This document shows, piece by piece, positions 27,843 to 44,664 of a DNA stretch of 64,000 nucleotides. The DNA lies in IMG/VR virus record IMGVR_UViG_3300010158_000027, positions 62,001 through 126,000 of that record; one strand, written 5' to 3'. The translations under genes were made by a program, and so were the position numbers. Within the stretch, counting starts at the first letter, position 1. Each line of letters opens with the position of its first letter. Below the pieces are notes generated by a model. It was not told the origin of the DNA and did not search any database. It saw nothing but the letters and a program-made list of their open reading frames with translations.

Positions 27843-28589
27843 TTAATATTCGTTATTTATTTTTCTTATAGTTTCTAAATACAGTGTCTTATATTTTTTA
27901 AGATATATCCTGATTTCCTTTGTATTGAGATTTGTCATTTCTCTTATCGCTAAGAGTACGATATTTTTGTTAAATTTATTATTATCGTTACCTATAAAAA
28001 TATTACCGTAGTTTTCAAATAATTCGATCAATGCGTTCCCTAATTTGAATTCATTATCATTTAACTTTGTCCCATCTACGTAGTTTTTTAAGTCCGTTAA
28101 AAAAATGTCTATTATTTTTTGAGCGTCCATTTTTTCAAACTCTATGTAGTATATCATATCAGGACGATTCTCTAAAGTTGCCGAAATGTCTTCGTATGAA
28201 ATTTTTCTATTTGTGTCTTTTTGATCCTTTTGTATTTGACCCATTAAATAGTTCTTACAAATGGTACCGAAATACGAATATGCTTTCTTATTTTTAGCGG
28301 GTTTAAACTTATCTACCTTTGTCATAAGAAATGAATGTGTGTCAGCATGAACATCAACATATTCCATATTTTTTCTGTAGAGTTTATATCTTCGTATGAT
28401 AGATTCTATCATCTTATCTAGCGGCTCTTTAAGAAATTTATTATAAATCTCTTCTTTTTCTTCGTAAGATTCGGCAGTGATATATCTTTTCACTGCCTCC
28501 TCCTCACGAACATCAAAGTAATTGGTTTTGTTTTTTTTTACTTCCTTTTGCGTTTCACTATCTTGAGTATCTTTTACATCTAAAATCAT
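27843..28589 (-). CDS. gp55: late-transcription sigma factor, T4 gp55-like
   Basis: KFKPAKNKKAYSYFGTICKNYL resembles the gp55 region-2 motif FDPEK..NPFAYFTQI. Confidence 0.65.
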   Translation of the reverse strand: MILDVKDTQDSETQKEVKKNKTNYFDVREEEAVKRYITAESYEEKEEIYNKFLKEPLDKMIESIIRRYKLYRKNMEYVDVHADTHSFLMTKVDKFKPAKNKKAYSYFGTICKNYLMGQIQKDQKDTNRKISYEDISATLENRPDMIYYIEFEKMDAQKIIDIFLTDLKNYVDGTKLNDNEFKLGNALIELFENYGNIFIGNDNNKFNKNIVLLAIREMTNLNTKEIRIYLKKYKTLYLETIRKINNEY

Positions 28590-29401
28590 TAAACGTTTTG
28601 TAGTTCATATTTTATATTTCTATCAGATGTGAAGAAATGTTCTTTTTTTGCTGACTCTAACCAAAACGTAACCTCGTCATCTGAGATTTTTTCTTCACCA
28701 AATTTATAATTCCAAAAAATAGAACCTTCTCTCATATTGGTGTGTTTGTACCCAATTCTCGGTATTGTCATAATTTTAACAGAATTATATGTCAATCTAA
28801 GTAAGAATTCATATACAAATGTTAATTTGATTGATGGTTTAAATCCTCCGTTATCTTCGTACACTGATTTTTTTATAACTATTCCACTTGATTGGAAATT
28901 TTGGTATGTCAATAAAACGTCATTTGTTAAGTATCCTATCTCACTATTCAAACTAACTGCGAATGTCGCCTCATTAGTGAATCCAGCAAATACTCCTTTA
29001 TCGTCAGTATCAACAACCAAAGGTAGGAACGATTCAACTTCAGGATATGCTTCAATAAATCGATTCACATTTTTAAACCAAATAGATGAATATTCGTCAT
29101 CAAATTCTAAAATTGATACCCACTTACTTTTTGCGTTTTTAACACCAAAATTAACCTGAGTTGCGAAATCTTTATCCCCCGTGTTTTCTACTATGTTAAC
29201 ATCCAACCCTTCGAAATCGTAAGTAGATAAATAGTTTTTAAGTGTCTCCTCACCAGTATGAACAATAACCAACTCATTAATACCTACCGTTTGGTTCTGT
29301 ACCGATTTAATCGATCTCTCAAATAATTCTTCAAATGATCTGTGTTTAGCTGAATCAATCGGTAATATAACCGATACGTCTAATTTTAATTTCTCCTCCA
29401 T
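28589..29401 (-). CDS. glycosyltransferase family 2
   Basis: VSVILPI, VNFGV...WVSILEFDDEY, YEFLLR. Confidence 0.85.
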   Translation of the reverse strand: MEEKLKLDVSVILPIDSAKHRSFEELFERSIKSVQNQTVGINELVIVHTGEETLKNYLSTYDFEGLDVNIVENTGDKDFATQVNFGVKNAKSKWVSILEFDDEYSSIWFKNVNRFIEAYPEVESFLPLVVDTDDKGVFAGFTNEATFAVSLNSEIGYLTNDVLLTYQNFQSSGIVIKKSVYEDNGGFKPSIKLTFVYEFLLRLTYNSVKIMTIPRIGYKHTNMREGSIFWNYKFGEEKISDDEVTFWLESAKKEHFFTSDRNIKYELQNV

Positions 29402-29402
29402 A

Positions 29403-30467
29403 TTAGTTTTCTTCTGTTATTTTTAGTTTATCTAGTTGTTCTGAGAATAATTTATGTCTTATTTCAAAATACTCCCCAAATGTTAATAGTACTTCATCTT
29501 TAAATTTTTCCTCGTCTCTATATTTTGAAGATGTAGTTTCCATTTCAACATATAAATCATCATTTATGTTATCCTCTAACCAGTTTTGAGTAAAATTCGC
29601 AACCACATCAACGATATCATTTATTTCTTGAGTCCATACACCGTTAGTGTCGCTCATCCATTCAGGTCTTAGTGCTGGTATTTTACCAATTACTGGTGTA
29701 CCGCACGACATTGACTCTAATGGGAAAGTACCGAATCCTGATTCATAATCAACCCAAACTGAAAGATATGTTTCTTTTAAAAATTTAGCAAAATCATCTT
29801 GTTTAATCCCTCTCATATCTCTAAAAGTAATCCATCTATATTGTGGGTATTTTAAGTAAAAAGTTTTAATAATTTTTGCAGTATCTCTCGGTTCTCTAGT
29901 GTGGATAGAAATGATAGGTTTAGATGGTTTCTCTTTTTTACTAAACACACTTGGTAATGTTGGTTGGATAATGTCCAAACTAACCCCTTTCATTACATCA
30001 GAAATGTATTTTTTCTGAGGTTCTGACGTTGTTATACATTTTAAGAACCCATATTGTGACCAAGATAATCCAGGAGGTAACGTTTCTAACATGTGATCAT
30101 ATGCTTGACATAAAACAATTTTACCACAAGGGAAGTTTTTAATCTGATCCATAACGTGACCGTAAACTTCTGGAATTACAATTAAATCTTCTGGTGAGAT
30201 TGCTAAATTTTGTCCTTCGATTGATTGGTGGGGTAAATCCATATATGTCTCATCTAACCAATCAGACACTCCTTTGTAATCATTACTCTCATGAATAATA
30301 ATCGGATTGTATCCATTATTTTTTAGTTTTAATGCGATATCATAGATGTATCTAACACCAGCCTTTGGGTTACCTTTAGTGTCCTGCACCAAGAAATAAA
30401 CCCTAGCGTTTTTATCCTCTAAGTTTTTTAGGGACTGCTCAATCTTTTCAATTTTTTCTAATTCCAT
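29403..30467 (-). CDS. GT-B fold glycosyltransferase
   Basis: ESGFGTFPLESMSCGTPVIG is an E-X7-E-type donor-binding motif. Confidence 0.8.
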   Translation of the reverse strand: MELEKIEKIEQSLKNLEDKNARVYFLVQDTKGNPKAGVRYIYDIALKLKNNGYNPIIIHESNDYKGVSDWLDETYMDLPHQSIEGQNLAISPEDLIVIPEVYGHVMDQIKNFPCGKIVLCQAYDHMLETLPPGLSWSQYGFLKCITTSEPQKKYISDVMKGVSLDIIQPTLPSVFSKKEKPSKPIISIHTREPRDTAKIIKTFYLKYPQYRWITFRDMRGIKQDDFAKFLKETYLSVWVDYESGFGTFPLESMSCGTPVIGKIPALRPEWMSDTNGVWTQEINDIVDVVANFTQNWLEDNINDDLYVEMETTSSKYRDEEKFKDEVLLTFGEYFEIRHKLFSEQLDKLKITEEN

Positions 30468-30470
30468 TTT

Positions 30471-30755
30471 TTAAAGTGTTTTTAATATGTTGTTTATTAA
30501 TAGTGTATTGAATGCAATTTTAAAAGGTATTGTTAAATTCTTCGATGCGTGCATACCCAAACCTTCATCGAGTTCCTCCCTTTCAGTTAAAATCACCTCA
30601 ACTAATGTTTTAAATGATTCGTATCTTGTTACACTTATTTGTTGATCACCCGGTTCGGGAGTTCCCGAAAACGGTAATATTGATTTTTCGTAACTAACCT
30701 GTCTTTCAAGTTCATTTATGTCCAAATAGTAATTCTCGCCTAAAAATTTTAACAT
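30471..30755 (-). CDS. hypothetical protein
   Basis: 94-aa ORF within the operon. Confidence 0.7.
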   Translation of the reverse strand: MLKFLGENYYLDINELERQVSYEKSILPFSGTPEPGDQQISVTRYESFKTLVEVILTEREELDEGLGMHASKNLTIPFKIAFNTLLINNILKTL

Positions 30756-31399
30756 ACGTTTAATTTTTGTAATACTTCGTCAAACTCTTCTAATGTATCA
30801 ATTACATAATCACAGTCAACATTTTTATTATATATTGTCGTATATTTCACAACAATTTTATCGTTTGGTTTATTTAATAGTAAGCTAGGGTTTGATGTAA
30901 GTAAAATGTCAATTTCATTCCACATTGAATTAATTGTAGAATTTGAGTAAAATTTTACCTTTTCTAACTGACATCCGAATTTTGATAGGAAAAAAAGTGA
31001 TGCGGGTTTTGATTTACCCATTTCATCTGATACGATTAAGAGTTCATTATTATCCCTATATTTTGTATATATTTCGTTAAGTTGATTAAAGGTGAAGGTT
31101 TCTGTTGATCCCGCATGTCCAAATAATTCCATGGCAAAATCCTCATACATAAAAGAGTATAATTCGTTGTCATCAATAAATTTAAAATGTTCCATTAAGT
31201 TAAGTGACGTAACATCACTTAAAATTTTATATTCGATTTGTTCGGGGGTTGGTATTGCCTCAGTATTACCCGATAAGTCGAGTTCAAAAGTTTTACCATC
31301 AAATTCTGACTCTTCAATCTTGTGTTTTTCATACACTTGCGTGAACTTACTAATGGTGTCTCGTAACACTCCATTAATTTCAATCCCTATTCTCTTCAT
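30749..31399 (-). CDS. HAD-fold 5'(3')-nucleotidase-like protein with degenerate motif I
   Basis: MKRIGIEINGVLRDT matches the NT5C-type N-terminus, but DxD is replaced by ExN. Confidence 0.6.
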   Translation of the reverse strand: MKRIGIEINGVLRDTISKFTQVYEKHKIEESEFDGKTFELDLSGNTEAIPTPEQIEYKILSDVTSLNLMEHFKFIDDNELYSFMYEDFAMELFGHAGSTETFTFNQLNEIYTKYRDNNELLIVSDEMGKSKPASLFFLSKFGCQLEKVKFYSNSTINSMWNEIDILLTSNPSLLLNKPNDKIVVKYTTIYNKNVDCDYVIDTLEEFDEVLQKLNVC

Positions 31400-32117
31400 A
31401 TTTTTTTAAGATTTTACTAATTAGGGGGTTTCTCACAATATCATCATCACCAAACTCAAACACACCGACATCGTGAACGTCTTTAAACTTTTGTGTTGCG
31501 TCGTATAATCCTGACTGTCTTTTATCTTTATATCTATCCGTTTGTTCGATGTCACCCGATATGAAAAATTTACTATTGAATCCGATTCTTGTTAGTAATA
31601 GTTTCATCTGGTTTGGACTCGAGTTTTGGGATTCCTCAAAAATTAAAATTGTATTGTCAATATTCATTCCTCTCATGTAGGCCAAAGCGAATACTTCAAT
31701 AATTTCACCTTCTTTTAGTTTTTCTCTTGCGTCTTTACCGATAATCTTATTAAGTAGGTAGTACGATGGAAAAATGTATGGATCTAATTTTTCTTCCAAA
31801 TTACCAGGTAGCGAACCTAATTTTTCTTCCGCCTCAACTGCCGGTCTAACAATAACCAACTTTTCGTAATGGTTGGTTGTATCCATTAATAAATCCACGG
31901 CTGCTTTCATTGCTATGTACGATTTACCGACACCTGCAGGTCCTGAACAGATAGTAATTTGGTTATTTTTTAATAAATTATAATACTCTTCTTGGTTCGT
32001 AGTTAAGAATTTGTTTTTTTGTTTTTTCTTAATGATTGAATTAATGAAGTCCTTTTTTGAGAATGGTTTAGATTCTGGTTCGTCATTTTGGGGTTGAATT
32101 GGTTTTCTTCTCGTCAT
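31380..32117 (-). CDS. phoH: PhoH family ATPase
   Basis: GPAGVGKS, LVIVRPAVE, LGSLPG, LAYMRG, ESQN, LLTRIG, SGDIEQTD. Confidence 0.95.
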   Translation of the reverse strand: MTRRKPIQPQNDEPESKPFSKKDFINSIIKKKQKNKFLTTNQEEYYNLLKNNQITICSGPAGVGKSYIAMKAAVDLLMDTTNHYEKLVIVRPAVEAEEKLGSLPGNLEEKLDPYIFPSYYLLNKIIGKDAREKLKEGEIIEVFALAYMRGMNIDNTILIFEESQNSSPNQMKLLLTRIGFNSKFFISGDIEQTDRYKDKRQSGLYDATQKFKDVHDVGVFEFGDDDIVRNPLISKILKKYEENRD

Positions 32118-32118
32118 A

Positions 32119-32220
32119 TTATTTTTTTAAAAAGATATGGTTTTTTTCAAAATATTCAATAGTTTTTTTAATACCATCGTAGCGTGTGGCAAATTTAAAG
32201 TTAGGTAAATAACGTTTTAT
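32119..32220 (-). pseudogene. start-less 3' remnant resembling the tail of an NDP-sugar epimerase/GDP-fucose synthase
   Basis: Intergenic frame reads IKRYLPNFKFATRYDGIKKTIEYFEKNHIFLKK-stop with no ATG. Confidence 0.55.
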
Positions 32221-32981
32221 TTATAAATTTCATAAAATTTATTAACAGAATTCAAAATATTTTCACATTTAATAACTTCATAAGTTATTATTTTATTGTA
32301 GTTTAACTTTTTAATATGATTAGAAAATTTAATATGAAAATCAAAATTTTTAATCATATCTAATTTATTTTCAGATATATGAATATGGTTAATATGTGAG
32401 TAATATTTTTCAAAATCAATTATTGGGTCAGAATTTTCTAAAATAATATTATGAGTATCAATCATAGTTTTTACATTATTTAGATTATTTTTAGTGATGA
32501 ATTCAACAATTTCAGATATTGTAAAAAAATATTCGCCTCCATATATTTTTGAATTTGGTTCTATTGAAATTTGTATTCCCGTTCCTTCCAAAATATGGTC
32601 TAATTCTTTAAAGGCTTTAGACAGATATTCTTCCCATCCTTCATATTTTTTTCTAAGTCCTGGCGACCCAAAAACTAAAATTTTTGAGGTCAATAATTTA
32701 GAAATTTTTATTAATCTTTTAAAGTGATTAATAAAAATATCATCATCCTTTATACCGTCACATTTGACACCGTAGAATAATGACTGTAATGATTGTATTG
32801 TAATATCTTTAGAGTTTAATATTTTCTTATATTTAATTATCTCATCATCAGATAAGTTTTCCCAAGAAGTTAGTTTTGTTAATACCCCTTCAATATTAAA
32901 AATACCTATTTTTTTTATTTCATCGAATATTATTTCAGATTCTTCATTATCCCACGCAAAATTACTTAATGACAAGTTCAT
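32217..32981 (-). CDS. sugar phosphate isomerase/epimerase (xylose-isomerase-like TIM barrel)
   Basis: LVFGSPGLR, ISIEPNS, MIDTHN, HIHISE, ITYE. Confidence 0.8.
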   Translation of the reverse strand: MNLSLSNFAWDNEESEIIFDEIKKIGIFNIEGVLTKLTSWENLSDDEIIKYKKILNSKDITIQSLQSLFYGVKCDGIKDDDIFINHFKRLIKISKLLTSKILVFGSPGLRKKYEGWEEYLSKAFKELDHILEGTGIQISIEPNSKIYGGEYFFTISEIVEFITKNNLNNVKTMIDTHNIILENSDPIIDFEKYYSHINHIHISENKLDMIKNFDFHIKFSNHIKKLNYNKIITYEVIKCENILNSVNKFYEIYK

Positions 32982-33729
32982 TTATTAATTCTTTAATTTC
33001 TGTTAATATAATTTCTTTCGTGTAAGAATAATCATTTTTTGAGAATTTTGTAGTGAAATCATAAACGATTTTATTTTCCGAAAAACTAACTTTATCCGTT
33101 AAAGACGGAAATAACTTTATTATTTCGGATGAATGTATAGGTTCAGGAAATAAATTAAAAATTGTATTATTAGGGTATAATTTTGAATACTCTATAATAT
33201 CATTAGATAACTTATTTAAGTTATACCATTGATACGTAGAATTAGAATTTATTAGTTCAATATTATTACTGTTAATCAAATCAAATAATATATTTTTTTT
33301 TATTTTATTATTAAAAAGGGATGGTAAACGAAAAATTTTTAAATCGTCAGTTTTTATAAACTCCTTAATTAAAACCTCAAATAGATATCTATTATTTCCA
33401 TAACTTAAATCCCGTATTATTGGTGTTGTGTCCTCATTTGATTTTAATTGAGCATTACTATACACATCAATAGTTGATATTAGAATAACTTTAGAAAATT
33501 TCTTATCTTTAATTAAATTAATAATATTTAACATATTTTCAAAATCCCCTGTTGGGTTTTTATTAACTAACCATTTAGTGGCGGGTAAGCAAGTTAAGTA
33601 TAGTTCCGAACCGTCTTCCACAATTTTTGGGAAATCTATTAAATTAGAACTATTAAATGTTAAATCAAAATTAATTGTTTCACACAAAGTTGTTCCCACT
33701 AAACCGGTATTACCTATTATTATTTTCAT
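32962..33729 (-). CDS. NAD-dependent epimerase/dehydratase-like (SDR)
   Basis: GNTGLVG Rossmann motif, ISTIDVY, YGNNR, FRLPSLF. Confidence 0.8.
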   Translation of the reverse strand: MKIIIGNTGLVGTTLCETINFDLTFNSSNLIDFPKIVEDGSELYLTCLPATKWLVNKNPTGDFENMLNIINLIKDKKFSKVILISTIDVYSNAQLKSNEDTTPIIRDLSYGNNRYLFEVLIKEFIKTDDLKIFRLPSLFNNKIKKNILFDLINSNNIELINSNSTYQWYNLNKLSNDIIEYSKLYPNNTIFNLFPEPIHSSEIIKLFPSLTDKVSFSENKIVYDFTTKFSKNDYSYTKEIILTEIKELINELVIK

Positions 33730-34721: not shown

Positions 34722-34726
34722 AGTTA

Positions 34727-35428: not shown

Positions 35429-35429
35429 A

Positions 35430-36119: not shown

Positions 36120-36122
36120 ATT

Positions 36123-37484: not shown

Positions 37485-37507
37485 AGTTTTATATAAATAA
37501 TTTATGT

Positions 37508-38167
37508 TTAGTGTTGAGCGATATAATCATCTTTATATGATTTATAACTATTTAATTCATAATCAAGTAATGGCTCATCAATAAAATAACATATATATCC
37601 CAAATTGGTAATTCTTAACCACGTATCGTAATCTTCAATACCTCTTAAATGATATGATTCTGATATTAAATTCACCTCATTTAACAAATCTTTAGACACT
37701 AAAACCGATGAATTAATAATTAAATTGTGTTTTTTTAGTAATTCATAATTAAATTCATATATATTATCAGGATTTTTTTGATTCCAAACATCAATATACT
37801 TACCTTTAGCGTATAACTGATCTTCATAATATGATTCGGTACAAATAAATTTATATTTATCAGTTAAAGACATTTGTTTTTCTAACTTTTCAGACTTCCA
37901 AGTATCATCATCATCTAAAAATGCTATCCAATCACCAAGGGATTGTTTTATTCCATAATTTCTAACAATAGATGGTAAACCACTACGTTTATCTAATTTA
38001 AAGTATCTAATATTGGTTCTTGTTTCTAATTCATCGTATCTAATGTCATCCGAACAATCATTAATTACTATTATTTCAAAATCAGTATAAGTTTGGTTTA
38101 GAACTGAATTTATTGATCTTTGTACCAAGTCGAATCTATTATATGTTGGTATTATAACGCTTACCAT
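37508..38167 (-). CDS. glycosyltransferase family 2
   Basis: VSVIIPTYNR, INDCSDD, RNYGI, AFLDDDD, EDYDTWLR. Confidence 0.92.
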   Translation of the reverse strand: MVSVIIPTYNRFDLVQRSINSVLNQTYTDFEIIVINDCSDDIRYDELETRTNIRYFKLDKRSGLPSIVRNYGIKQSLGDWIAFLDDDDTWKSEKLEKQMSLTDKYKFICTESYYEDQLYAKGKYIDVWNQKNPDNIYEFNYELLKKHNLIINSSVLVSKDLLNEVNLISESYHLRGIEDYDTWLRITNLGYICYFIDEPLLDYELNSYKSYKDDYIAQH

Positions 38168-38180
38168 ATCCTTTATTTTT

Positions 38181-38324
38181 TTACATTACCAGTTTATAAT
38201 GATAATTGATGGGATTATCATTTTTGTCTATTCTTCCCCCCATAAAACTACCATCTTTTCTCTTAACGGGGAATGGTATTTTTTCATGAAGGAAGACGTC
38301 TTCTTGTTGTTGGCTATAATACAT
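38181..38324 (-). pseudogene. 47-aa chimeric scar ORF (FkbM-like start joined to a glycosyltransferase-like tail)
   Basis: MYYSQQQEDVFL-HEKIPFPVKRKDGSFMGGRIDKNDNPINYHYKLVM; the second half aligns with the tail of 38327..38974. Confidence 0.5.
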
Positions 38325-38326
38325 AA

Positions 38327-38974
38327 TTATAAATGGTTTGTGTGTTCAGGGTATAGCATTTCATCATTTTCATTAAATGCTTGTCCCACGAATGTTTTAT
38401 ATTCCCTCTCCGTTGGGAACGGTGTGTGTTCAAAGAACTCATCATGAACCACACAATTAAGTTTTACTATCGGATAAATCTTTTCTCTCAAAAAGTTTTG
38501 ATCTACTTGCCAAAAATCTCCCTTGACGTATTCGTCAATTAGTTGTTTCATTTCCTTTATGGTTCCTTTTTTTGATCCCCACATTCCCCCTAAAATTTCA
38601 GTTCCATGAGCTGGATGATCCCTCATAATATGAAATCCTTTATCTGAATTTAACCATTCATCGACAGCATATTTCTCTCTTAAGTTTACCCTTGAGTCGC
38701 AGTCTCTAACAATCACCACATCAACATCATCATCAGACGAGGGATAGAATCTCCAAAACATTCCGTCCCAATCACCCTCAACTCCCATATTAATTAGTTC
38801 AACATTATCAAACTCTTTTAATTTTTCTATGGTACTTTCTAACGTGGATGTTCCGTAATAATATCTACACACCCAATCAGGGTAAACATCTTTTGCCAAT
38901 TCAGCATTTCTAATTGCCCCTACATTATAAACGGGATTATCCCCCCATAAAGAGAATGATATTATTTTTTTCAT
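38327..38974 (-). CDS. putative glycosyltransferase (FSLWG/MFWRF/RDCDSR family)
   Basis: MKKIISFSLWG, GMFWRF, RDCDSR (DxD), HIMRDHP, GGMWG, DQNFL. Confidence 0.6.
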   Translation of the reverse strand: MKKIISFSLWGDNPVYNVGAIRNAELAKDVYPDWVCRYYYGTSTLESTIEKLKEFDNVELINMGVEGDWDGMFWRFYPSSDDDVDVVIVRDCDSRVNLREKYAVDEWLNSDKGFHIMRDHPAHGTEILGGMWGSKKGTIKEMKQLIDEYVKGDFWQVDQNFLREKIYPIVKLNCVVHDEFFEHTPFPTEREYKTFVGQAFNENDEMLYPEHTNHL

Positions 38975-39639
38975 AAATAAAAATTATTTGATTGTCTTGT
39001 TTGGTAAACATTGTTATCATGATGCCAATCCTTAACATTATTATTATGAACGTGGTCAGGTGATCCATATCCCCAATCAGGGTGTTCGTGTTTTATTATT
39101 ACAGTATCAATATAAACTTGTTTATTTAATAGATTACCCACCACCATAAATTCATTGTCTGACCAACAGGATTTATAATCAGGATGGTAAATGTAGTTAA
39201 ATCTTTTGTAGTATTCTCTTCCTAAAATACAAAGGGTGTTTAATCTATTTCCTTGGAATCCATCATTAAACCATAAAACTCCGTCCGTATCTGGGTAATT
39301 AAATGTCATGTTATCTCTTATAATGTCGTCGTAACCTTTAATTTGTGGTATCATATCATCAGATGCCAGTAATACAATATCCCACTCGTACTCCAACTCA
39401 TTTAAATCCCTATTTACAGCATCAATTTTAGATAACGAACTGCCCACAACCACTTTTGTGTTTTTATACTCATTAAGTTGGGTTATTACCTCATCTGTAT
39501 TCATTTCATCATCGTCAGCATCAATAGAAATCAAAAAAAACGTATTGTCAATATTGTTACAATACTCATGATATTTATTTAGTGTTGAAAAAAACATCTC
39601 TTTCCTTCCCCTAGTCGGGAACTTAATAAGTAATTTCAT
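38971..39639 (-). CDS. GT2-like glycosyltransferase
   Basis: KFPTRGR, LASDDM, SDNEF, IKHEH. Confidence 0.7.
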   Translation of the reverse strand: MKLLIKFPTRGRKEMFFSTLNKYHEYCNNIDNTFFLISIDADDDEMNTDEVITQLNEYKNTKVVVGSSLSKIDAVNRDLNELEYEWDIVLLASDDMIPQIKGYDDIIRDNMTFNYPDTDGVLWFNDGFQGNRLNTLCILGREYYKRFNYIYHPDYKSCWSDNEFMVVGNLLNKQVYIDTVIIKHEHPDWGYGSPDHVHNNNVKDWHHDNNVYQTRQSNNFYL

Positions 39640-41276
39640 TCGTTTATAATTTTAATATATTCCTCTTTTATTTTTTTTGCAACCTCCTCTGAATTAAATC
39701 TATTAATGTCAGATGGAATGTCAACTCTCTCTTTATTTAATATTTCCCCACTTTCATTAACGTTATAAATCCATCCGGGTTTTCCACACATCCAACCCTC
39801 AATGGTCGTTCTACCCAAGAGAATTCCCGCAGTCTCGGAACAGTTTTTAACGAACGTGCCCACCTTATTGGTTGCGTTATGGTATTTAACGTGTTGGTTA
39901 GATAACAAATCATTTAAATAATTCGATTTGTTTTCACCCACCAACCACAATTCCTTATTAATCGACTTGGAGTAATCAACTAGATCTCGTATTGAGTCTT
40001 CTCTTAAATAATCAATCGTCCCAACAAATAGGACATACCCGTCGTCTTTGGTGTTTTTAATGTTAAACTTTTTAGAATCTATTGGGTTATAAATGATTTC
40101 CGTCTTATCTTTTGGTATTTCAAAATTATCTATAATGTGTTTTTGTATTTCAGGTCGAATGCAAATATACTTTTTAATTGTTTCATTAAGTACTGGATTC
40201 TCAAGTTCAATCACTTCAGAATGTATGGTAGAAATCTTGTCTACGTTTGGATACATTTGACACATTTGATTGGTTACGGGTGTATGTTGTGTGTGGATAA
40301 TATCGAAGTCAACTTCACCCACCTTATACATCATGTTCGGTTGTGACGGTGTAACACCTTGTGGAGTATTGAATCCCCACTTCCCATCACCCAATTTATA
40401 TCCTGGAGCTGAACTAAAAGGTAAAACCTTTATCCCTTGTTTCTGAGCTAATTTGGATAGTTCCCCATCAATATCTGAAAGTACCGTAACATCACAATTT
40501 AAGTTTTTAAGTCCCCTTGCCAATTCATACACATACATTTCTGATCCGGTGTAGGTTTTAAAAAACAAACAAGACAACAATACTTTTAATGGTGATTCTA
40601 AAGTTAGATTTCTGTTAACTTTAACTGGTAAAACGTCTTTGTATTTTTCAGCAAATACTTCTCTATTTTTTTCCCATTGTTCGTTTGTCTGACCAATTGA
40701 TTTATGTGTGACTCTAACATCATACATAACCCCAATTTTAACTCCCTCAATAAAATTCCTAAAAGAAAAATCAACATCATAAAAGTGAAACCCTCCGATG
40801 TCTTGATTAAAATTTTGTTTAATCTTTTTTTTATTTATTACGATAAACAATCCATCCACCAAAACGACACTATCCAATTGGTTACCTAAATTGTTTGAGT
40901 ATTTGGATTCCCATTTTTTGCCTTCGTGTTCGTGATTGACGATACCTTTCATCTTTGAAAAATCTTCCCACCATCTGCCAGATTTTGGCATGTTTGTGGT
41001 TCCAGCTAACCCTAAAATTCCGTATTCATCGTTTCTTTTAAAATGGTTAATGATTTTTTGACCCCAATTTTTTGAATCGAAATATATATCATCATGCAGT
41101 AGCACTACGATATCGTTTGTGGATTGGTCTAAAATCCTATTATAAATTTCAGTTAAAGAGTATTCACCATTGTTTTCAAATGGAATAACTTCGGGAGACG
41201 GAACCCCCGAAGTTTTTGTTAACATTTTAATAAAATCGTTATCAATATGTCTTGTTGAGAATCCTATCGTTATCAT
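39636..41276 (-). CDS. two-domain glycosyltransferase (GT-A N-terminus plus GT-B/GT4-like C-terminus)
   Basis: N-terminal YNRIL...LLHDDI...FHFYDVD; C-terminal TGSEMYVYELARGL...GRTTIEGWMCG. Confidence 0.8.
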   Translation of the reverse strand: MITIGFSTRHIDNDFIKMLTKTSGVPSPEVIPFENNGEYSLTEIYNRILDQSTNDIVVLLHDDIYFDSKNWGQKIINHFKRNDEYGILGLAGTTNMPKSGRWWEDFSKMKGIVNHEHEGKKWESKYSNNLGNQLDSVVLVDGLFIVINKKKIKQNFNQDIGGFHFYDVDFSFRNFIEGVKIGVMYDVRVTHKSIGQTNEQWEKNREVFAEKYKDVLPVKVNRNLTLESPLKVLLSCLFFKTYTGSEMYVYELARGLKNLNCDVTVLSDIDGELSKLAQKQGIKVLPFSSAPGYKLGDGKWGFNTPQGVTPSQPNMMYKVGEVDFDIIHTQHTPVTNQMCQMYPNVDKISTIHSEVIELENPVLNETIKKYICIRPEIQKHIIDNFEIPKDKTEIIYNPIDSKKFNIKNTKDDGYVLFVGTIDYLREDSIRDLVDYSKSINKELWLVGENKSNYLNDLLSNQHVKYHNATNKVGTFVKNCSETAGILLGRTTIEGWMCGKPGWIYNVNESGEILNKERVDIPSDINRFNSEEVAKKIKEEYIKIINE

Positions 41277-41884
41277 AAACCAGTACTTCCAAAAGCATTA
41301 TCGTTTCTATCTTTTTCATCAATGTCGTCAACTTTAATCAAATCAACCCACTTGCCACATAAAACGGGACACAGAACCGCTTGAGCGATTTTTTGTCCTT
41401 TTTCTATTTTAATCCTTTCGTTTGTTGTGTTAAAAATAATGACTTTAATTTCATTTATATACCCACTATCCACCGTTCCTGGAGAATTTAAAACCATTAA
41501 TCCTTGATTTAATGCCAACCCACTTTTACTTCTGACTTGTATTTCGTACCCTAATGGAATATCAAATCTTAACCCTGTAGGTATTAGTTTTCTGTTATTT
41601 GCTTGCACCCAAACCTCCTCCGTTGATCTTAAATCAAATCCAGAATCGGACTCGTATGCATATTCTGGGTTCTGATTCTCACTGTCATTAATATATTTTA
41701 CAGGAACTTTTTGATCGACAATAGAATCTACCGGTTGATTAAATTGGTTCTCAATGTCATTAACATCAATACCCATTGAATCTAACATCGACTGAGGATC
41801 GGACATATCAATATTACTTAATTTGCCTTGTAATTCCTTAAGCATTTTCATGCTGTCCCTCATGTCTTTTATTTTTTCAAACAT
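41273..41884 (-). CDS. dut: dUTPase with N-terminal extension
   Basis: SGFDL, RSKSGLA, GTVDSGY, KIAQ, FGSTG. Confidence 0.9.
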   Translation of the reverse strand: MFEKIKDMRDSMKMLKELQGKLSNIDMSDPQSMLDSMGIDVNDIENQFNQPVDSIVDQKVPVKYINDSENQNPEYAYESDSGFDLRSTEEVWVQANNRKLIPTGLRFDIPLGYEIQVRSKSGLALNQGLMVLNSPGTVDSGYINEIKVIIFNTTNERIKIEKGQKIAQAVLCPVLCGKWVDLIKVDDIDEKDRNDNAFGSTGL

Positions 41885-42600
41885 TATTTTAAATTTTTAA
41901 GTTTAGTTATAAAATCAATTAACACTTTCACATCTTTCTCGCAATATTCAGAGATTTCTTGTAATTTCTGCTCCTCCCAATACGCACTATGTACGTTTGC
42001 TCCAGTCACTTCACCATCTTTCGGTGTGTCGATTCCCATTGATGAACAAACTAAATCTAATGATCCGATGGCGGTGTATGATCCATATTGCCAAATATCT
42101 TTGGTGTCAATTGCTTTAACCTCCCATGGCTTCGTATCGTACGATGGTAGTATCTTAGACGGTAAAATACCGTTTATTATCATCCTTTTTGCCAACATGG
42201 GTATGTCAAAATTCTTTAAGTTATGCCCACATAGATAAAAATCTAATTTGTGACATCTATCTAAGAGTGATCTCACCTGTAATAAAAGTTCCTTTTCATC
42301 ATCCCCCGAAAAGGTTTGCTTTTTAATCTCTCCGTTTTCCATAACAAATGCCATGGATACACAAATAATTTTTGCAAACTCAGGAACAAGTGCCGCACGT
42401 TTTTTAAAGATAAAATCTTTAAGTTCAGTACGAGGACTCAATACCTCGTCTTCAGGGAAACGTTTTAAAAACCAATCAAAATACTTATGGTATTGTTCGG
42501 CGATGTGGGGACTAAATCTTTCACAAGACTCTAAGTCAGGACAACCACCAACGGTTTCAATATCTAAAAACAGAATTTTGGTAATGGGTATATTAATCAT
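41884..42600 (-). CDS. stand-alone 3'-5' exonuclease (PolB-exo-like)
   Basis: FLDIETV, GHNLKNFDIP, YCEKDV. Confidence 0.85.
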   Translation of the reverse strand: MINIPITKILFLDIETVGGCPDLESCERFSPHIAEQYHKYFDWFLKRFPEDEVLSPRTELKDFIFKKRAALVPEFAKIICVSMAFVMENGEIKKQTFSGDDEKELLLQVRSLLDRCHKLDFYLCGHNLKNFDIPMLAKRMIINGILPSKILPSYDTKPWEVKAIDTKDIWQYGSYTAIGSLDLVCSSMGIDTPKDGEVTGANVHSAYWEEQKLQEISEYCEKDVKVLIDFITKLKNLK

Positions 42601-43814
42601 TTTACTAAGGATTTGTATAGAATTGCTCTATCGTTTGTTACTTTATTTAAATCATATGTGTCTTTAACTGTTTCATAAAGACGTTGTCCCAAGTCGTATG
42701 CGAAATTAGGGTTGTCAATTAATTTTTTCATATATTTCGACCAATCACTGTGGTTTCTTGCTTCATCCACCAAAAGAGCATTACCATCAGTAAATTCACC
42801 ATTTTTTAATGAGTGTTTTAAATCAATCGTGTAAGGACCAATGTTTGATGCGATGATTGCCTTTTTGTAGAATCCCGCCTCAATTACTTTAAGTTGTGAT
42901 TTAACTCTATTGAATATGTGATTTTTAATCGGAGCCAAAGATACGTCAAATAATCTATAATTCGTAGCGTAACTTGTTACAGGTTTAGTCCATACTCGAT
43001 TATAAAACGGTGAACTATCTGAAACATACTCCTCCTCTTTAAATTTCATAAGGAAGTCTTTATGTTTCGGATCAACCATATCATAATTATTTGTAAAAAT
43101 CTCCTCGTATTTCGCCCATACAGTTTCATCGGGGTTAATCGGTCTCTGTTTTTGTTCTCCCGTTTGTTGGTTAATTTCCGTAACGGTACCACGAGTATCA
43201 AACCCACAAAGAGACATACTGAATTTATCTTTATATGGTTTTAATTTAGATATAGTTCCGTCTAATAATTTTAAATCATGTAAATGTGACGATCCACCTA
43301 ACCATCCGAAACGTAATCTATCTGATGGTATTGTCTCTGCCATGAACTGAGGTTCTTTAGGGTTGATGGCATTAGGTAAAACAAAAACATTTTTGTTAAA
43401 CTTCATCATCTCATCAGCAAACACCGTAGTTGTTGTTGTCACACATGACGCAACTTTTAAATTCTCAATAATTTTTTTATGTAAATTATTTTGAATCACC
43501 AATTGGTGTACAGGATGTTCCTTAGTCGGCAACCAATAGTCATCTAAGTCCATGATTGTTACTATCCCAAGAGCGTTAAGTCTTTGGATTAAACCCACTG
43601 AATTGTCGTACTCATGTCCTATCGTTCTATGGAAATGGACGATGTCATATTGTTTCCAATAGTTAATGTCGTTTACTCTTGGTTCGTAGTCAATGTCTAC
43701 GTGAAAGTCATCGCTGTGGTTATTTTGTAAACACACGTGCGGATCAATAGAGCGAAATTTTCCACAGCCGGTACGGTCGCTAGGGGTTACTAAAACCCTA
43801 ATTTTTTTTGACAT
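42597..43814 (-). CDS. GT-B fold glycosyltransferase
   Basis: DRTGCGKFRS, MDLDDYW, GWLGGSSH, FNRVKSQLKVIEAG. Confidence 0.85.
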   Translation of the reverse strand: MSKKIRVLVTPSDRTGCGKFRSIDPHVCLQNNHSDDFHVDIDYEPRVNDINYWKQYDIVHFHRTIGHEYDNSVGLIQRLNALGIVTIMDLDDYWLPTKEHPVHQLVIQNNLHKKIIENLKVASCVTTTTTVFADEMMKFNKNVFVLPNAINPKEPQFMAETIPSDRLRFGWLGGSSHLHDLKLLDGTISKLKPYKDKFSMSLCGFDTRGTVTEINQQTGEQKQRPINPDETVWAKYEEIFTNNYDMVDPKHKDFLMKFKEEEYVSDSSPFYNRVWTKPVTSYATNYRLFDVSLAPIKNHIFNRVKSQLKVIEAGFYKKAIIASNIGPYTIDLKHSLKNGEFTDGNALLVDEARNHSDWSKYMKKLIDNPNFAYDLGQRLYETVKDTYDLNKVTNDRAILYKSLVK

Positions 43815-43968: not shown

Positions 43969-43971
43969 AAT

Positions 43972-43998: not shown

Positions 43999-44018
43999 AA
44001 CATTATAAGTTTAAAATA

Positions 44019-44663: not shown

Positions 44664-44664
44664 A

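What the first reader, a model, noticed from the sequence alone, without database searches (positions are those of the whole stretch)
28589..43814. 15-kb glycosylation island in a phage
Seen: about ten GT-A/GT-B-like genes, an FkbM methylase and an isomerase/SDR/FAD trio, interleaved with PhoH, dUTPase and an exonuclease on one strand. Known: T4-type DNA glucosylation needs only one or two transferases, whereas large GT sets with methylases build complex glycans, as in giant-virus fibre glycans and capsule loci. Inference: the phage builds a multi-sugar methylated glycan on virion proteins, the Ser/Thr-rich secreted proteins, or the host surface.
Basis: partly seen in the sequence, partly recalled or inferred. 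Interest (0 to 1): 0.7.

Follow-up and report, generated by a model that had tools for sequence, protein, structure and literature searches.

The report
Hypervariable glycan-building island in jumbo phage
An uncultured 281-kb freshwater phage carries 19 same-strand genes, ten of them sugar-transferring enzymes. In related phages the middle of this block is swapped between strains like a bacterial O-antigen locus, so it must build a strain-specific sugar chain inside the infected cell, on a target that is still unknown.

Summary
Window 28589-43814 is 19 tightly packed minus-strand genes, 98% coding. Ten encode glycosyltransferases (11 GT domains). The rest include an FkbM methyltransferase, a FAD-oxidoreductase / SDR-like / xylose-isomerase-type TIM-barrel trio, PhoH, dUTPase and a PolB-type 3'-5' exonuclease.

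The new point is the architecture. In 65-70 related IMG/VR phage contigs, four GTs (g19, g16, g2, g1) and the nucleotide-metabolism genes form a conserved frame. The frame encloses a 2.5 to >10 kb low-GC variable region holding at least 236 gene families, mostly GTs, NDP-sugar enzymes and methyltransferases. Here the cassette (about 32.17-38.3 kb) is the lowest-GC 6 kb of the genome, and it is replaced in 93-97%-identical strains.

None of 706 cassette ORFs is a multi-pass membrane protein. The genome lacks Wzx, Wzy and initiating-transferase families. It has a canonical ThyA and no hydroxymethylase, TET or T4 glucosyltransferase.

Best reading: soluble enzymes assemble a strain-specific methylated oligosaccharide stepwise in the cytoplasm. 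The most likely acceptor is a virion protein (about 0.4). Remodelling of a host envelope glycan is the main rival (about 0.3). DNA is unlikely. This is a new variant of the GT-rich hypervariable islands known from cyanomyophages, pelagimyophages and giant viruses.

The parts
42597..43814 (-). g19, 405 aa. Conserved GT-B (GT4-like) glycosyltransferase and first gene of the block.
   Evidence: phrog_7162 at 1e-43. AF2 pLDDT 87.8. Foldseek matches GlgM, MshA, PglA, BshA and PimA at 1e-13 to 1e-10, and ALG2, MshA and WclY in Swiss-Prot. Present in 59 of 70 loci at a median 80% identity. At least 7,994 homologous 90%-identity clusters in metagenomes.
43882..43998 (-). Putative transcription-unit boundary upstream of g19: a terminator-like hairpin (43998-43976), then a sigma70-like TTGACT-17-TATACT site (43910-43882).
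   Evidence: Consensus scan. It is one of only 13 strong sigma70-like sites lying in intergenic DNA genome-wide, and is correctly oriented. This is a pattern match only; function is inferred.
41884..42600 (-). g18, 238 aa. PolB-exo2 / RNase H-fold 3'-5' exonuclease (backbone gene).
   Evidence: PF10108 at 3.8e-13. Present in 58 loci at a median 73% identity.
41273..41884 (-). g17, 203 aa. dUTPase (backbone gene).
   Evidence: PF00692 at 1.9e-23; NF001862 at 8e-39. Present in 65 loci.
39636..41276 (-). g16, 546 aa. Conserved two-domain glycosyltransferase: N-terminal GT-A (Glyco_tranf_2_5) plus C-terminal GT-B (Glyco_transf_4).
   Evidence: PF13712 at 7.5e-29 (residues 15-212) and PF13439 at 2.7e-12 (residues 243-401). 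70 IMG/VR loci at 48-82% identity. In L048, L025 and L049 it carries an extra polysaccharide pyruvyl-transferase domain.
38971..39639 (-). g15, 222 aa. Glycosyltransferase, GT-A-like, semi-variable.
   Evidence: phrog_14945 at 6.5e-17. Invariant SDD and HEHPD motifs in 8 sequences. Found in 7 of 70 loci and in L079.
38327..38974 (-). g14, 215 aa. GT-A fold glycosyltransferase (GT8 / A64R-like), semi-variable.
   Evidence: AF2 pLDDT 80. Foldseek matches glycogenin at 1.7e-7 and PBCV-1 A64R (2P6W) at 1.7e-6. Profile against 2P6W gives E 0.032. Invariant R-D-x-D-S-R motif. 4,401 homologs, many named 'protein O-GlcNAc transferase' by JGI.
32170..38322 (-). Strain-variable low-GC cassette (genes g13 to g6). 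It is bounded by the two largest intergenic gaps.
   Evidence: Lowest-GC 6-kb window of the 281-kb genome: 0.246 against 0.329. Contigs of 93-97%-identical strains break at 38322/38297 and about 32169. Alternative junctions occur at 32154, 32170 and 32248 in samples that also hold this strain. Its genes are found in 0-2 of the 70 IMG/VR loci, apart from distant GT2 hits of g13.
37508..38167 (-). g13, 219 aa. GT2 glycosyltransferase.
   Evidence: PF00535 at 7.7e-30. Closest NCBIfam model is TuaG at 2.4e-31, far below its equivalog cut-off.
36759..37484 (-). g12, 241 aa. Probable GT-A glycosyltransferase, partner of the methyltransferase g11.
   Evidence: Atlas 0.99 to phage clusters; structural neighbours are GT8, GT6 and Nucleotid_trans. 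1,126 representative homologs. Invariant D-x-D and His. Of 10 long homologs, 3 are fused to FkbM, 1 to Methyltransf_24 and 1 to GT1. No Pfam or PDB sequence hit.
36123..36758 (-). g11, 211 aa. FkbM-family methyltransferase, abutting g12 with 0 nt between them.
   Evidence: PF05050 at 3.7e-11; TIGR01444 at 4.5e-10, above its cut-off.
35430..36119 (-). g10, 229 aa. Probable GT31/Fringe-like GT-A glycosyltransferase.
   Evidence: Atlas 0.98 to Galactosyl_T/Fringe clusters of phages and giant viruses. Pfam Galactosyl_T E 0.012, sub-threshold. PDB B3GALT5 E 0.11. 54%-identical homolog in L079.
34727..35428 (-). g9, 233 aa. GT-A glycosyltransferase (Glyco_tranf_2_4 / GT92).
   Evidence: PF13704 at 1.8e-12; PF01697 at 8.4e-10.
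33729..34721 (-). g8, 330 aa. FAD/NAD-binding oxidoreductase, first gene of a mobile three-gene sugar-redox module.
   Evidence: PF01266 at 1.6e-6, residues 3-71 only. 793 homologs. Always followed by g7- and g6-like genes in L078, L079 and L080.
32962..33729 (-). g7, 255 aa. SDR/epimerase-like protein (weak assignment), middle gene of the module.
   Evidence: PF01370 at 2.5e-3, below cut-off. Conserved position between the DAO and TIM genes, at 56-62% identity in L079 and L078.
32217..32981 (-). g6, 254 aa. Xylose-isomerase-like TIM barrel (sugar isomerase, epimerase or dehydratase superfamily), last gene of the module.
   Evidence: PF01261 at 6.1e-17. Weak similarity to IolO, IolE and psicose 3-epimerase.
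31380..32117 (-). g5, 245 aa. PhoH-like ATPase. Backbone gene that marks the far edge of the variable region.
   Evidence: PF02562 at 1.3e-63. 17 loci reach it within the flank, at 77% median identity.
30471..31399 (-). g4 (216 aa) and g3 (94 aa). Conserved backbone genes of unknown function.
   Evidence: No hit in Pfam, PHROG or NCBIfam. They are syntenic with PhoH in 13-15 loci.
29403..30467 (-). g2, 354 aa. Conserved GT-B glycosyltransferase of the Agt/AmGGT type.
   Evidence: Family profile A3 against PDB 8XSG gives 3.2e-14 over residues 90-336. 8XSG is the A. minor glucoside glucosyltransferase, a homolog of Agt, which extends N-linked glucose on adhesin peptides. Pfam GT1 is only 5e-3.
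28589..29401 (-). g1, 270 aa. Conserved GT2 glycosyltransferase and last gene of the block.
   Evidence: PF00535 at 1.3e-8, above cut-off. Conserved next to g2 in 5 loci and in L079.

Best explanation
The region is the glycan-diversity locus of an abundant, uncultured lineage of freshwater T4-like jumbo phages.

Architecture. Four glycosyltransferases are conserved across the lineage: g19 (GT4-like GT-B), g16 (GT-A + GT-B fusion), g2 (Agt/AmGGT-like GT-B) and g1 (GT2). They sit in a fixed frame with the dUTPase, exonuclease and PhoH genes. Between g16 and PhoH lies a recombination-prone slot that each strain fills with a different low-GC cassette.

This strain's cassette. It contributes six GT-A enzymes (g15, g14, g13, g12, g10, g9), an FkbM O-methyltransferase paired with g12, and a mobile three-gene sugar redox/isomerase module (g8-g7-g6).

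Mechanism. All products are soluble, and no lipid-carrier, flippase or polymerase function is encoded. The most economical mechanism is therefore stepwise transfer, in the cytoplasm, of single sugars from nucleotide sugars onto a growing chain. The nucleotide sugars would come from the host pool, with one tailored by the module. I infer that the conserved GTs lay down a common inner part and the cassette enzymes add a strain-specific, partly methylated outer part.

Target. My preferred acceptor is one or more virion surface proteins, such as the collagen-like or Pro/Thr-rich fibre proteins or capsid decorations. This would follow the pattern of chloroviruses, mimiviruses and mycobacteriophages.

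Shown: gene identities, soluble nature, frame-plus-cassette architecture, strain-level replacement, and absence of the DNA hydroxymethylation and export machinery searched for.
Inferred: one common product, the division of labour between core and cassette, and the acceptor.
Probabilities: glycan-assembly locus with a swappable cassette, about 0.9. Acceptor is a virion protein, about 0.4.
For: Gene content: see the observation check.

Frame and cassette:
- tblastn of all island proteins on 70 IMG/VR loci gives the fixed order g19-g18-g17-g16-[variable]-PhoH-g4-g3-g2-g1.
- The variable region spans 2.5 to >10 kb and is almost always lower in GC than the flank.
- Its 706 ORFs fall into 236 clusters.
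- The Pfam tally over 150 cluster representatives is dominated by Epimerase, GT2, RmlD, GDP-mannose dehydratase, FkbM, other methyltransferases, GT11, DegT, TylF, GT8, NodZ and FdtA.

Turnover:
- Locus pairs whose g19 is 95-99% identical share a median of 15% of cassette families.
- The window's nearest relatives (88-90% identical g19) share none.
- Strain contigs break at about 32169 and 38322.
- The cassette is the lowest-GC stretch of the genome.
- The g8-g7-g6 trio recurs at 54-62% identity in an unrelated phage-like contig, amid other GT and methyltransferase genes.

Soluble pathway:
- 0 of 19 island proteins and 0 of 706 cassette ORFs have two or more hydrophobic segments.
- The genome has no Wzy_C, Polysacc_synt, Bac_transf or Glycos_transf_4 family hit.

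Pointers to a protein or virion target:
- The g14 fold resembles glycogenin, the Skp1 galactosyltransferase and the PBCV-1 A64R capsid-glycan GT. It shares 22-38% identity with giant-virus proteins.
- g2 belongs with Agt/AmGGT enzymes of a cytoplasmic protein N-glycosylation system.
- g12+g11 equals the GT-FkbM fusions found elsewhere.
- The genome encodes several collagen-like (Gly-Thr-Ser)n and Pro/Thr-linker proteins.
- A second GT gene (1028 aa, GT1+GT9) lies beside collagen-like genes, both here and in its one IMG/VR relative.
Against: - Nothing links any GT to any acceptor. All fold matches are to broad GT4, GT8 and GT2 superfamilies whose members act on lipids, sugars, proteins and small molecules alike.
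- Many of the best matches of g19 and g13 (ALG2, PglA, AceA, WclY, TuaG, WcaA, PglI) act on polyprenol-linked glycans.
- The island sits among nucleotide-metabolism genes and behind a sigma70-like (early-type) promoter, not inside the structural module.
- No recognisable protein-priming GT (NGT/HMW1C, Maf, EarP type) was identified.
- 'One product' is an assumption. The cassette could hold enzymes for several unrelated acceptors.
- The collagen-gene adjacency rests on two related genomes only.
Confidence: 0.42

Rival explanations
1. Host-envelope remodelling. The soluble phage GTs act at the cytoplasmic face of the inner membrane, on the host's own undecaprenyl-linked O-antigen or capsule intermediates or on lipid A-core. 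The host's exporters then display the altered glycan. This would change the infected cell's surface to block superinfection or to stop progeny re-adsorbing. Cassette diversity would then track host serotype and competing phages.
For: - This is the interpretation published for the analogous GT-rich hypervariable islands of pelagimyophages and cyanomyophages (PMC7029224).
- The nearest named relatives of g13, g19 and g16 are polysaccharide-pathway enzymes acting on lipid-linked acceptors.
- Relatives' cassettes often carry GDP-mannose dehydratase, a DegT aminotransferase and FkbM/RfbT-like methyltransferases. On my own knowledge, that gene set is typical of perosamine- or fucose-containing O-antigens.
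- A sigma70-like promoter upstream suggests early expression.
Against: - Every experimentally established phage system for altering host surface glycans that I know of (Gtr, Oac, phage Wzy; own knowledge) uses integral membrane proteins. There is none here, and none in 706 cassette ORFs.
- No initiating transferase, flippase or polymerase is present.
- The phage would depend on host exporters accepting many different foreign structures.
- The host is unknown.
Confidence: 0.3
2. DNA hypermodification. The GTs decorate modified bases of the phage genome with a complex glycan to evade restriction and CRISPR, as in T-even phages and the metagenomic 5hmC-glycosylating phages.
For: - The block is embedded among nucleotide-metabolism genes (dUTPase, exonuclease, PhoH).
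- The core GT g19 is extremely conserved.
- The moraphage paper cites a report that diverse DNA glycans are made by virus-encoded GTs.
Against: - The only thymidylate-synthase-family gene is a canonical ThyA. It scores 5.5e-71 against solved ThyA and keeps the catalytic Cys and the dUMP-specifying Asn motif.
- There is no Tet_JBP hit and no T4 beta- or alpha-glucosyltransferase family hit.
- The g19 fold matches GT4 enzymes; no DNA glucosyltransferase appears among the top 50.
- Deoxy-, amino- and methyl-sugar pathways and fucosyltransferases in relatives are typical of surface glycans.
Confidence: 0.06
3. No single product. The slot between g16 and PhoH is simply a hyperplastic region where unrelated auxiliary genes accumulate. 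The enzymes would serve several acceptors (small molecules, host cytoplasmic proteins, storage or compatible-solute sugars) or be partly non-functional passengers.
For: - T4-like genomes are known to have plastic regions that collect auxiliary genes (discussed in PMC7029224).
- g3, g4 and parts of the cassette have no assignable function.
- The minimal loci (L025, L048) carry only an APS-kinase-like, a HAD-like and a cytidylyltransferase-like gene.
Against: - The content is overwhelmingly one theme. GT, NDP-sugar and methyltransferase families dominate 150 cluster representatives.
- Genes are tightly packed and co-oriented, with overlapping stops and starts.
- The slot is framed by four conserved GTs in all relatives.
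- GT-methyltransferase gene pairs match fused proteins found elsewhere.
Confidence: 0.15

Closest known systems
Hypervariable 'host recognition cluster' and LPS-gene islands of pelagimyophages and T4-like cyanomyophages (PMC7029224)
   Same: An aquatic T4-like myovirus with a conserved modular backbone. It has a large non-syntenic island rich in glycosyltransferases and sugar-nucleotide enzymes. The function is untested, and diversity is attributed to host interaction.
   Different: This island lies between nucleotide-metabolism genes rather than among tail-fibre genes. It is framed by four conserved GTs. It contains no tail fibres. The lineage is different: TerL is only 26-30% identical to any isolated phage. 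The soluble-only content and the strain-level cassette replacement are documented here.
Giant-virus glycosylation machinery: chlorovirus PBCV-1 A064R and partners; clade-specific glycan clusters of Megavirinae (own knowledge; PDB 2P6W title)
   Same: Virus-encoded soluble GT-A enzymes combined with methyltransferase functions. Sugar-nucleotide tailoring enzymes such as GMD and DegT occur in relatives. The gene sets are lineage-specific. The g14 fold resembles the A64R GT domain and shares 22-38% identity with giant-virus proteins.
   Different: Here the host is bacterial and the virus is tailed. No glycan has been observed. Sequence relationships are remote (E 0.032 by sequence profile).
Mycobacteriophage virion glycosylation (Freeman et al. 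2023, as cited in PMC12619734)
   Same: Phage-encoded cytoplasmic GTs that modify capsid and tail proteins. Gene content varies between related phages.
   Different: To my knowledge those clusters are small and lie next to the structural genes. Here there are ten GTs in a swap-prone locus far from the capsid gene, and no C-terminal acceptor tail has been identified.
Bacterial O-antigen and capsule loci
   Same: Conserved flanks enclose a low-GC, horizontally exchanged cassette of GTs, NDP-sugar enzymes and methyltransferases. Closely related strains carry different cassettes.
   Different: All membrane steps are lacking: initiating transferase, Wzx, Wzy, Wzm/Wzt.
T4-type DNA glucosylation
   Same: Phage-encoded GT-B enzyme(s) located near nucleotide-metabolism genes.
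   Different: There is no hydroxymethylase and no TET. The ThyA is canonical. No BGT or AGT family member is present. There are ten GTs plus sugar-tailoring enzymes.
'Moraphages', aquatic jumbo phages up to 307 kb (PMC12619734)
   Same: Similar size and habitat. Core genes include dUTPase, PhoH, a sigma factor, PolB and four putative glycosyltransferase orthogroups. The authors noted variable genomic islands but did not analyse them.
   Different: This genome has no HSP70/DnaK and no glutamine synthetase, whereas heat-shock genes are reported in all moraphages. Its strong -35/-10 type promoters do not suggest a Bacteroidota host. Membership was not established.

Membership tests
T4-type DNA glucosylation system | A dCMP (or dUMP) hydroxymethylase of the thymidylate-synthase family, or a TET/JBP dioxygenase, to create the hydroxymethyl acceptor | tested here: not met
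   There is one PF00303 locus in 281 kb. It is a canonical ThyA: 5.5e-71 to solved ThyA, with the catalytic Cys and the Asn-containing dUMP motif. No PF12851 hit.
T4-type DNA glucosylation system | A GT63 (beta) or GT72 (alpha) DNA glucosyltransferase | tested here: not met
   No PF09198 or PF11440 hit. The PF09198 search had no positive control among the control genomes. The g19 model matches GT4 enzymes.
Wzx/Wzy- or ABC-dependent polysaccharide (O-antigen/capsule) locus | An initiating polyprenol-phosphate glycosyl/phosphoglycosyl transferase | tested here: not met
   No PF02397 or PF00953 hit in the genome.
Wzx/Wzy- or ABC-dependent polysaccharide (O-antigen/capsule) locus | Flippase, polymerase or ABC permease (multi-pass membrane proteins) | tested here: not met
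   No PF01943 hit. PF04932 gives only a 13-bit hit with an internal stop. 0 of 19 island proteins and 0 of 706 cassette ORFs have two or more hydrophobic 19-residue segments.
Wzx/Wzy- or ABC-dependent polysaccharide (O-antigen/capsule) locus | A low-GC, horizontally exchanged cassette of GTs and NDP-sugar enzymes between conserved flanks | tested here: met
Temperate-phage serotype conversion (Gtr/Oac type) | Membrane-embedded GtrA/GtrB/GtrC or an acyltransferase | tested here: not met
   No multi-pass membrane proteins in the island. Integrase and lysogeny genes were not searched for.
Virus-encoded virion protein glycosylation (chlorovirus, mimivirus, mycobacteriophage type) | Soluble virus-encoded GTs, with sugar-tailoring or methylating enzymes, acting without lipid carriers | tested here: met
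   Ten soluble GTs, an FkbM methyltransferase and a redox/isomerase trio. A GT-methyltransferase module. The g14 fold is A64R-like.
Virus-encoded virion protein glycosylation (chlorovirus, mimivirus, mycobacteriophage type) | Glycan demonstrably attached to capsid, tail or fibre proteins | not testable with these tools
   Only candidate acceptors could be listed: collagen-like and Pro/Thr-rich proteins.
Hypervariable GT-rich islands of aquatic T4-like myophages (pelagimyophage/cyanomyophage HRC) | T4-like structural and replication core with a non-syntenic island between conserved modules | tested here: met
   TerL, portal, major head protein and PolB are in the window. The frame-plus-variable-region architecture holds in 65 loci.
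Hypervariable GT-rich islands of aquatic T4-like myophages (pelagimyophage/cyanomyophage HRC) | Island located in the structural region and containing the tail-fibre genes | tested here: not met
   The island is flanked by the dUTPase, exonuclease and PhoH genes. No fibre-like ORF lies within 28589-43814.
Moraphages (PMC12619734) | Heat-shock chaperone genes (DnaK/DnaJ), reported in all members | tested here: not met
   No PF00012 hit. DnaJ was not searched. There is also no glutamine synthetase.
Moraphages (PMC12619734) | Phylogenetic placement by TerL, MCP and PolB with the published genomes | not tested
   The published genomes were not available in the searchable collections.

The most novel reading that the evidence does not exclude
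The locus is a viral 'serotype' locus. The four conserved transferases prime and build a common inner glycan on a virion surface protein, and the exchangeable cassette writes a strain-specific outer glycan. Co-existing strains of one abundant freshwater jumbo-phage lineage would then wear different sugar coats, maintained by frequency-dependent selection. It would be the phage counterpart of bacterial O-antigen diversity and of the clade-specific fibril glycans of giant viruses.
Probability: 0.33. Interest if true: 0.8.

Novelty: new variant of a known kind. Interest (0 to 1): 0.55.

Why it matters
Glycosyltransferase-rich islands are among the commonest unexplained features of large aquatic phages. 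They are usually listed as 'LPS genes' and left there.

This lineage is very abundant. At least 7,994 distinct 90%-identity clusters of the core enzyme g19 occur in public metagenomes. It also offers an unusually clean case:
- a fixed frame of four transferases;
- a defined insertion slot;
- hundreds of alternative cassettes;
- strain pairs that differ only in the cassette;
- no membrane or DNA-modification machinery to confuse the picture.

That makes an old question testable with a handful of soluble proteins: what do lytic phages glycosylate, and why does it diversify so fast?

If the acceptor is the virion, tailed phages would join giant viruses in making their own variable glycan coats. 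That has consequences for adsorption, for decoy and aggregation behaviour, and for grazing. The cassettes would also be a large reservoir of soluble GTs, O-methyltransferases and rare-sugar modules for glyco-engineering.

Tried and rejected
- Megablast of the whole island, and tblastn of g16 and g2, against 50,697 phage records found nothing. No isolated phage is a close relative. TerL is at most 30% identical.
- Sequence-profile searches of PDB for g19 and g12, and a single-sequence search for g10, gave no significant hit. Only g2 hit clearly, and g14 weakly.
- hhalign of the g12 family against the g14 family gave probability 1.6%. They are not demonstrably related beyond the D-x-D region.
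- Expression timing could not be settled. The sigma70-type scan is not above shuffled expectation for the region as a whole (112 sites against 117 expected). Only the intergenic subset is enriched genome-wide (13 of 76 strong sites in 6.9% of the DNA). TATAAATA is frequent in AT-rich spacers, but only 20 of 125 copies lie within 60 nt upstream of a same-strand gene, and the island copies (32218, 35446) are ambiguous. I draw no early/late conclusion.
- The phage could not be filed as a moraphage. HSP70 and glutamine synthetase are absent.
- Host identification was not achieved. The source names give no organism.
There is therefore no expression evidence.
- The product of the g8-g7-g6 trio could not be assigned. 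It has only superfamily-level hits.
- The T4-like DNA glucosylation and capsule-locus readings were considered and rejected on the membership tests.

Full report
WHAT IS THERE

The window is positions 62001-126000 of a single 281,269-bp contig with 32.9% GC. The contig is an IMG/VR virus record that CheckV rates 96% complete. It is a tailed phage. A large terminase (1139-2917), a portal with an HNH insert (2957-5734) and a T4-type major head protein (10180-11982) lie upstream, and a family-B DNA polymerase lies downstream. No isolated phage is close: TerL is at most 30% identical. Public runs that hold the sequence are freshwater, lake-water and freshwater-sediment metagenomes.

The finding's coordinates are exact. 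28589-43814 is 19 co-oriented minus-strand genes covering 98% of the span, mostly with overlapping or abutting stops and starts. Only two sizeable gaps exist, at 32117-32217 and 38167-38327.

GENE-BY-GENE CHECK

In transcription order:
- g19: GT-B glycosyltransferase. phrog_7162 at 1e-43. AF2 pLDDT 87.8. Foldseek matches GlgM, MshA, PglA, BshA and PimA at 1e-13 to 1e-10.
- g18: PolB-exo2 exonuclease. g17: dUTPase.
- g16: Glyco_tranf_2_5 + Glyco_transf_4 fusion.
- g15: phrog_14945 glycosyltransferase at 6.5e-17, with invariant SDD and HEHPD motifs.
- g14: GT-A. AF2 pLDDT 80. Matches glycogenin at 1.7e-7 and the PBCV-1 A64R capsid-glycan GT at 1.7e-6. Invariant D-x-D.
- g13: GT2 at 7.7e-30.
- g12: probable GT-A. 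The evidence is Atlas look-alikes, an invariant D-x-D and His in 45 homologs, and a domain fused to FkbM, Methyltransf_24 or GT1 domains in 5 of 10 long homologs.
- g11: FkbM methyltransferase.
- g10: probable GT31/Fringe-like GT.
- g9: Glyco_tranf_2_4/GT92.
- g8: FAD/DAO-type oxidoreductase. g7: weak SDR-like. g6: xylose-isomerase-like TIM barrel.
- g5: PhoH.
- g4, g3: unknown.
- g2: GT-B. Its family profile hits the solved A. minor glucoside glucosyltransferase 8XSG at 3.2e-14. That enzyme is a homolog of Agt, which extends N-linked glucose on adhesin peptides.
- g1: GT2.

Seven are well supported, g15 rests on a PHROG match, and g10 and g12 are leads. With identical criteria (PF00535 and PF00534 over the whole genome), 4 of 5 hits fall in these 19 genes (Fisher p = 4.6e-5).

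THE ISLAND IS A CONSERVED FRAME AROUND A SWAPPABLE CASSETTE

A scan of IMG/VR with g16 returned 70 loci at 48-82% identity. Laying all island and flank proteins on them gives one recurrent order: five upstream genes, then g19, g18, g17, g16, a variable region, PhoH, g4, g3, g2, g1 and a sigma-factor-like gene.

- g19 is the best conserved, with a median 80% identity.
- The variable region ranges from 2.5 kb to more than 10 kb. It is always co-oriented, and its GC is almost always 2-7 points below the flank.
- Its 706 ORFs fall into 236 families at 30% identity and 60% coverage.
- Representatives of the 150 largest families were scanned against Pfam. The leading families were Epimerase (13), GT2 (13), RmlD (11), GDP-mannose 4,6-dehydratase (9, best 2e-118), FkbM (8), Methyltransf_24 (8), GT11 (5), DegT (4), TylF (3), GT8 (3), NodZ (3) and FdtA (2).
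- The commonest single families are a GT2 (40 loci), a GT11 fucosyltransferase (38), a GT10-like enzyme (30), DegT (18), GMD (17) and FkbM (17).
- The smallest loci have g16 fused to a polysaccharide pyruvyl-transferase domain, plus APS-kinase-like, HAD-like and cytidylyltransferase-like genes.

THE CASSETTE TURNS OVER FAST

- Locus pairs with at least 99% identical g19 share all cassette families. Pairs at 95-99% share a median of 15%. The window's closest relatives (88-90%) share none.
- In this genome the stretch 32001-38000 is the lowest-GC 6-kb window of all 281 kb (0.246 against 0.329). It holds 6 of the 15 lowest-GC genes.
- Contigs from other samples were laid on the region. Two samples (X3, X4) carry the identical cassette.
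- Strains 93-97% identical (X5, X8) cover g14-g19 and then diverge at 38322 or 38297. X8 also covers g2-PhoH and diverges at about 32169.
- Alternative junction sequences at 32154, 32170 and 32248 co-occur with this strain.
- The unit g13-g6 (about 32.17-38.3 kb) is therefore replaced as a block, at the two large intergenic gaps. Contigs are fragmentary, so absence is inferred from loose ends rather than from holes.
- A metagenomic relative (L079) has a related but not identical cassette. It has g15, g14, an FkbM gene, a g12-like gene, g10 and g8-g7-g6. It lacks g13 and g9 and has an extra GT.
- The g8-g7-g6 trio recurs at 54-62% identity on an unrelated phage-like contig, among other GT and methyltransferase genes. 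It is a mobile module.

WHAT IT IS NOT

DNA glucosylation of the T4 type needs a hydroxymethyl-pyrimidine.
- The only thymidylate-synthase-family gene is a canonical ThyA (5.5e-71 to solved ThyA, catalytic Cys and dUMP-specific Asn motif present).
- The phage also keeps a dUTPase.
- There is no Tet_JBP, T4 beta-glucosyltransferase or alpha-glucosyltransferase family hit.

A self-contained capsule or O-antigen pathway needs an initiating transferase and membrane export steps.
- No Bac_transf, Glycos_transf_4 or Polysacc_synt hit, and no credible Wzy_C hit, exists in the genome.
- None of the 19 island proteins or the 706 cassette ORFs has two or more strongly hydrophobic segments.
- For the same reason, Gtr-type serotype conversion is excluded.

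HOW IT MOST LIKELY WORKS

All enzymes are soluble, so the chain must be built by sequential single-sugar transfers in the cytoplasm or at its membrane face.

I infer that the four lineage-wide GTs make a common inner structure and the cassette enzymes add the strain-specific outer part. In this strain the outer part would include:
- an O-methylated residue from the g12+g11 pair, which is the split form of GT-FkbM fusion proteins;
- possibly a rare sugar tailored by g8-g7-g6.

The acceptor is not shown. I favour virion proteins, at about 0.4, for these reasons:
- Every experimentally established case of a purely soluble, virus-encoded multi-GT system that I know of decorates the virion. These are chlorovirus capsid and mimivirus fibrils (own knowledge), and mycobacteriophage capsid and tail (cited in PMC12619734).
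- g14 resembles the PBCV-1 A64R capsid-glycan GT and protein-directed GT8 enzymes, and has giant-virus homologs.
- g2 belongs with enzymes of a cytoplasmic protein-glycosylation system.
- The genome is rich in plausible acceptors: four collagen-like (Gly-Thr-Ser)n proteins with up to 199 triplets, and several Pro/Thr-linker proteins.
- Another GT gene (1028 aa, GT1+GT9) sits beside collagen-like genes, here and in its one relative.

The main rival, at about 0.3, is remodelling of host lipid-linked envelope glycans. This is the published guess for the analogous islands of pelagimyophages and cyanomyophages (PMC7029224). It fits the polysaccharide-pathway relatives of g13 and g19 and the apparently early-type promoter upstream of g19.

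DNA modification (about 0.06) and 'no single product' (about 0.15) complete the list.

COMPARISON WITH WHAT IS KNOWN, AND NOVELTY

GT-rich hypervariable islands are described in cyanomyophages and pelagimyophages. Carbohydrate-gene variable regions are described in prasinoviruses. A 2025 paper on aquatic jumbo 'moraphages' notes four core GT orthogroups and unexplored variable islands. This genome, however, lacks the DnaK and glutamine synthetase typical of that group.

What is added here:
- the frame-plus-slot architecture;
- the size of the cassette gene pool;
- replacement at strain level, with mapped breakpoints;
- the complete absence of membrane and DNA-modification partners;
- the mobile redox/isomerase trio;
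- the GT-methyltransferase module.

I rate it a new variant of a known kind, of moderate-to-good interest (0.55). The phenomenon is not new, but this is a clean and abundant system in which the long-open question of the acceptor becomes testable.

Noticed in passing
window 2957-5734 (+): The portal gene is 925 aa. An HNH-endonuclease region (about residues 114-282) precedes the portal domain (residues 412-806). It may be an intein or a fused homing endonuclease.
   Followed up: no
window 10180-13845 (+): The major head protein is 600 aa, and the T4-type head domain occupies only residues about 334-577. A 591-aa homing/HNH endonuclease gene (phrog_3339 at 2e-85) follows immediately.
   Followed up: no
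G000:C1:244976-246268 (+), outside the window (L071:1486-2778): The thymidylate synthase is 430 aa, against about 264-316 aa for solved ThyA. It carries two insertions, roughly at residues 232-269 and 334-411, within an otherwise highly conserved ThyA.
   Followed up: partly
window 7052-7080, 43882-43910, 59517-59545, and ten other genome sites: Near-consensus TTGACA-17-TATAAT-type promoters sit in intergenic DNA, correctly oriented upstream of genes including the DNA polymerase and g19. Thirteen of 76 strong sites lie in the 6.9% of the genome that is intergenic. This suggests a host with a classical sigma70 -35/-10 promoter, which on my own knowledge would be unusual for Bacteroidota.
   Followed up: partly
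G000:C1:27907-30447, 40723-43122, 43449-45338, 183835-185139 (outside the window): Four collagen-like proteins built of Gly-Thr-Ser-type triplets, with up to 199 consecutive G-X-Y repeats. They are probably fibres.
   Followed up: partly
G000:C1:47729-50815 (+), outside the window (L076): A 1028-aa protein with GT1 and GT9 (heptosyltransferase-family) domains lies 2.4 kb downstream of two collagen-like genes. The same adjacency occurs in its only IMG/VR relative, L082 (73% identical), next to a 1916-aa collagen-like protein.
   Followed up: partly
window 13896-17888 (+): A 1330-aa protein with a signal-peptide-like N-terminus (hydrophobic stretch after MKK), a region of 62% Ser+Thr around residue 834, and a weak galactose-binding-like domain hit (T9SS-associated family, E 4e-4, below cut-off).
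   Followed up: no
window 46602-49271 (+) and G000:C1:179109-183521: Proteins with long Pro/Thr/Ala linker runs of the TPTPTP type. In other organisms this is a classic site of O-glycosylation.
   Followed up: no
window 20781-20960 (+): Two adjacent tRNA genes, tRNA-Ser(UGA) and tRNA-Ala(UGC), lie between the structural genes and the minus-strand block.
   Followed up: no
window 44665-45072 and 45806-46549 (-): Conserved upstream neighbours of the island include a WYL-domain protein (5e-5) and a DUF3721-containing protein (3e-9).
   Followed up: no
L048:3794-7081 and L025:8410-12085: In the relatives with the smallest variable region, g16 is 830 aa with an added polysaccharide pyruvyl-transferase domain. 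The slot holds APS-kinase-like, HAD-like and cytidylyltransferase/ATP-sulfurylase-like genes. This hints at pyruvylated and perhaps sulfated glycans in those strains.
   Followed up: partly
L081 (Escherichia phage Mt1B1_P17, NC_052662.1 45046-48190): Distant g19 homologs (26% identity) occur in two copies within a four-gene glycosyltransferase cluster of rV5-like coliphages (Phapecoctavirus). The cluster lies between the endolysin and DNA polymerase genes. I found no functional study of it.
   Followed up: partly
window 25456-27447 (-): A 663-aa protein just beyond the island has three hydrophobic segments and no family hit. It could be the tape-measure or ejection protein that the moraphage authors could not find in their phages.
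   Followed up: no
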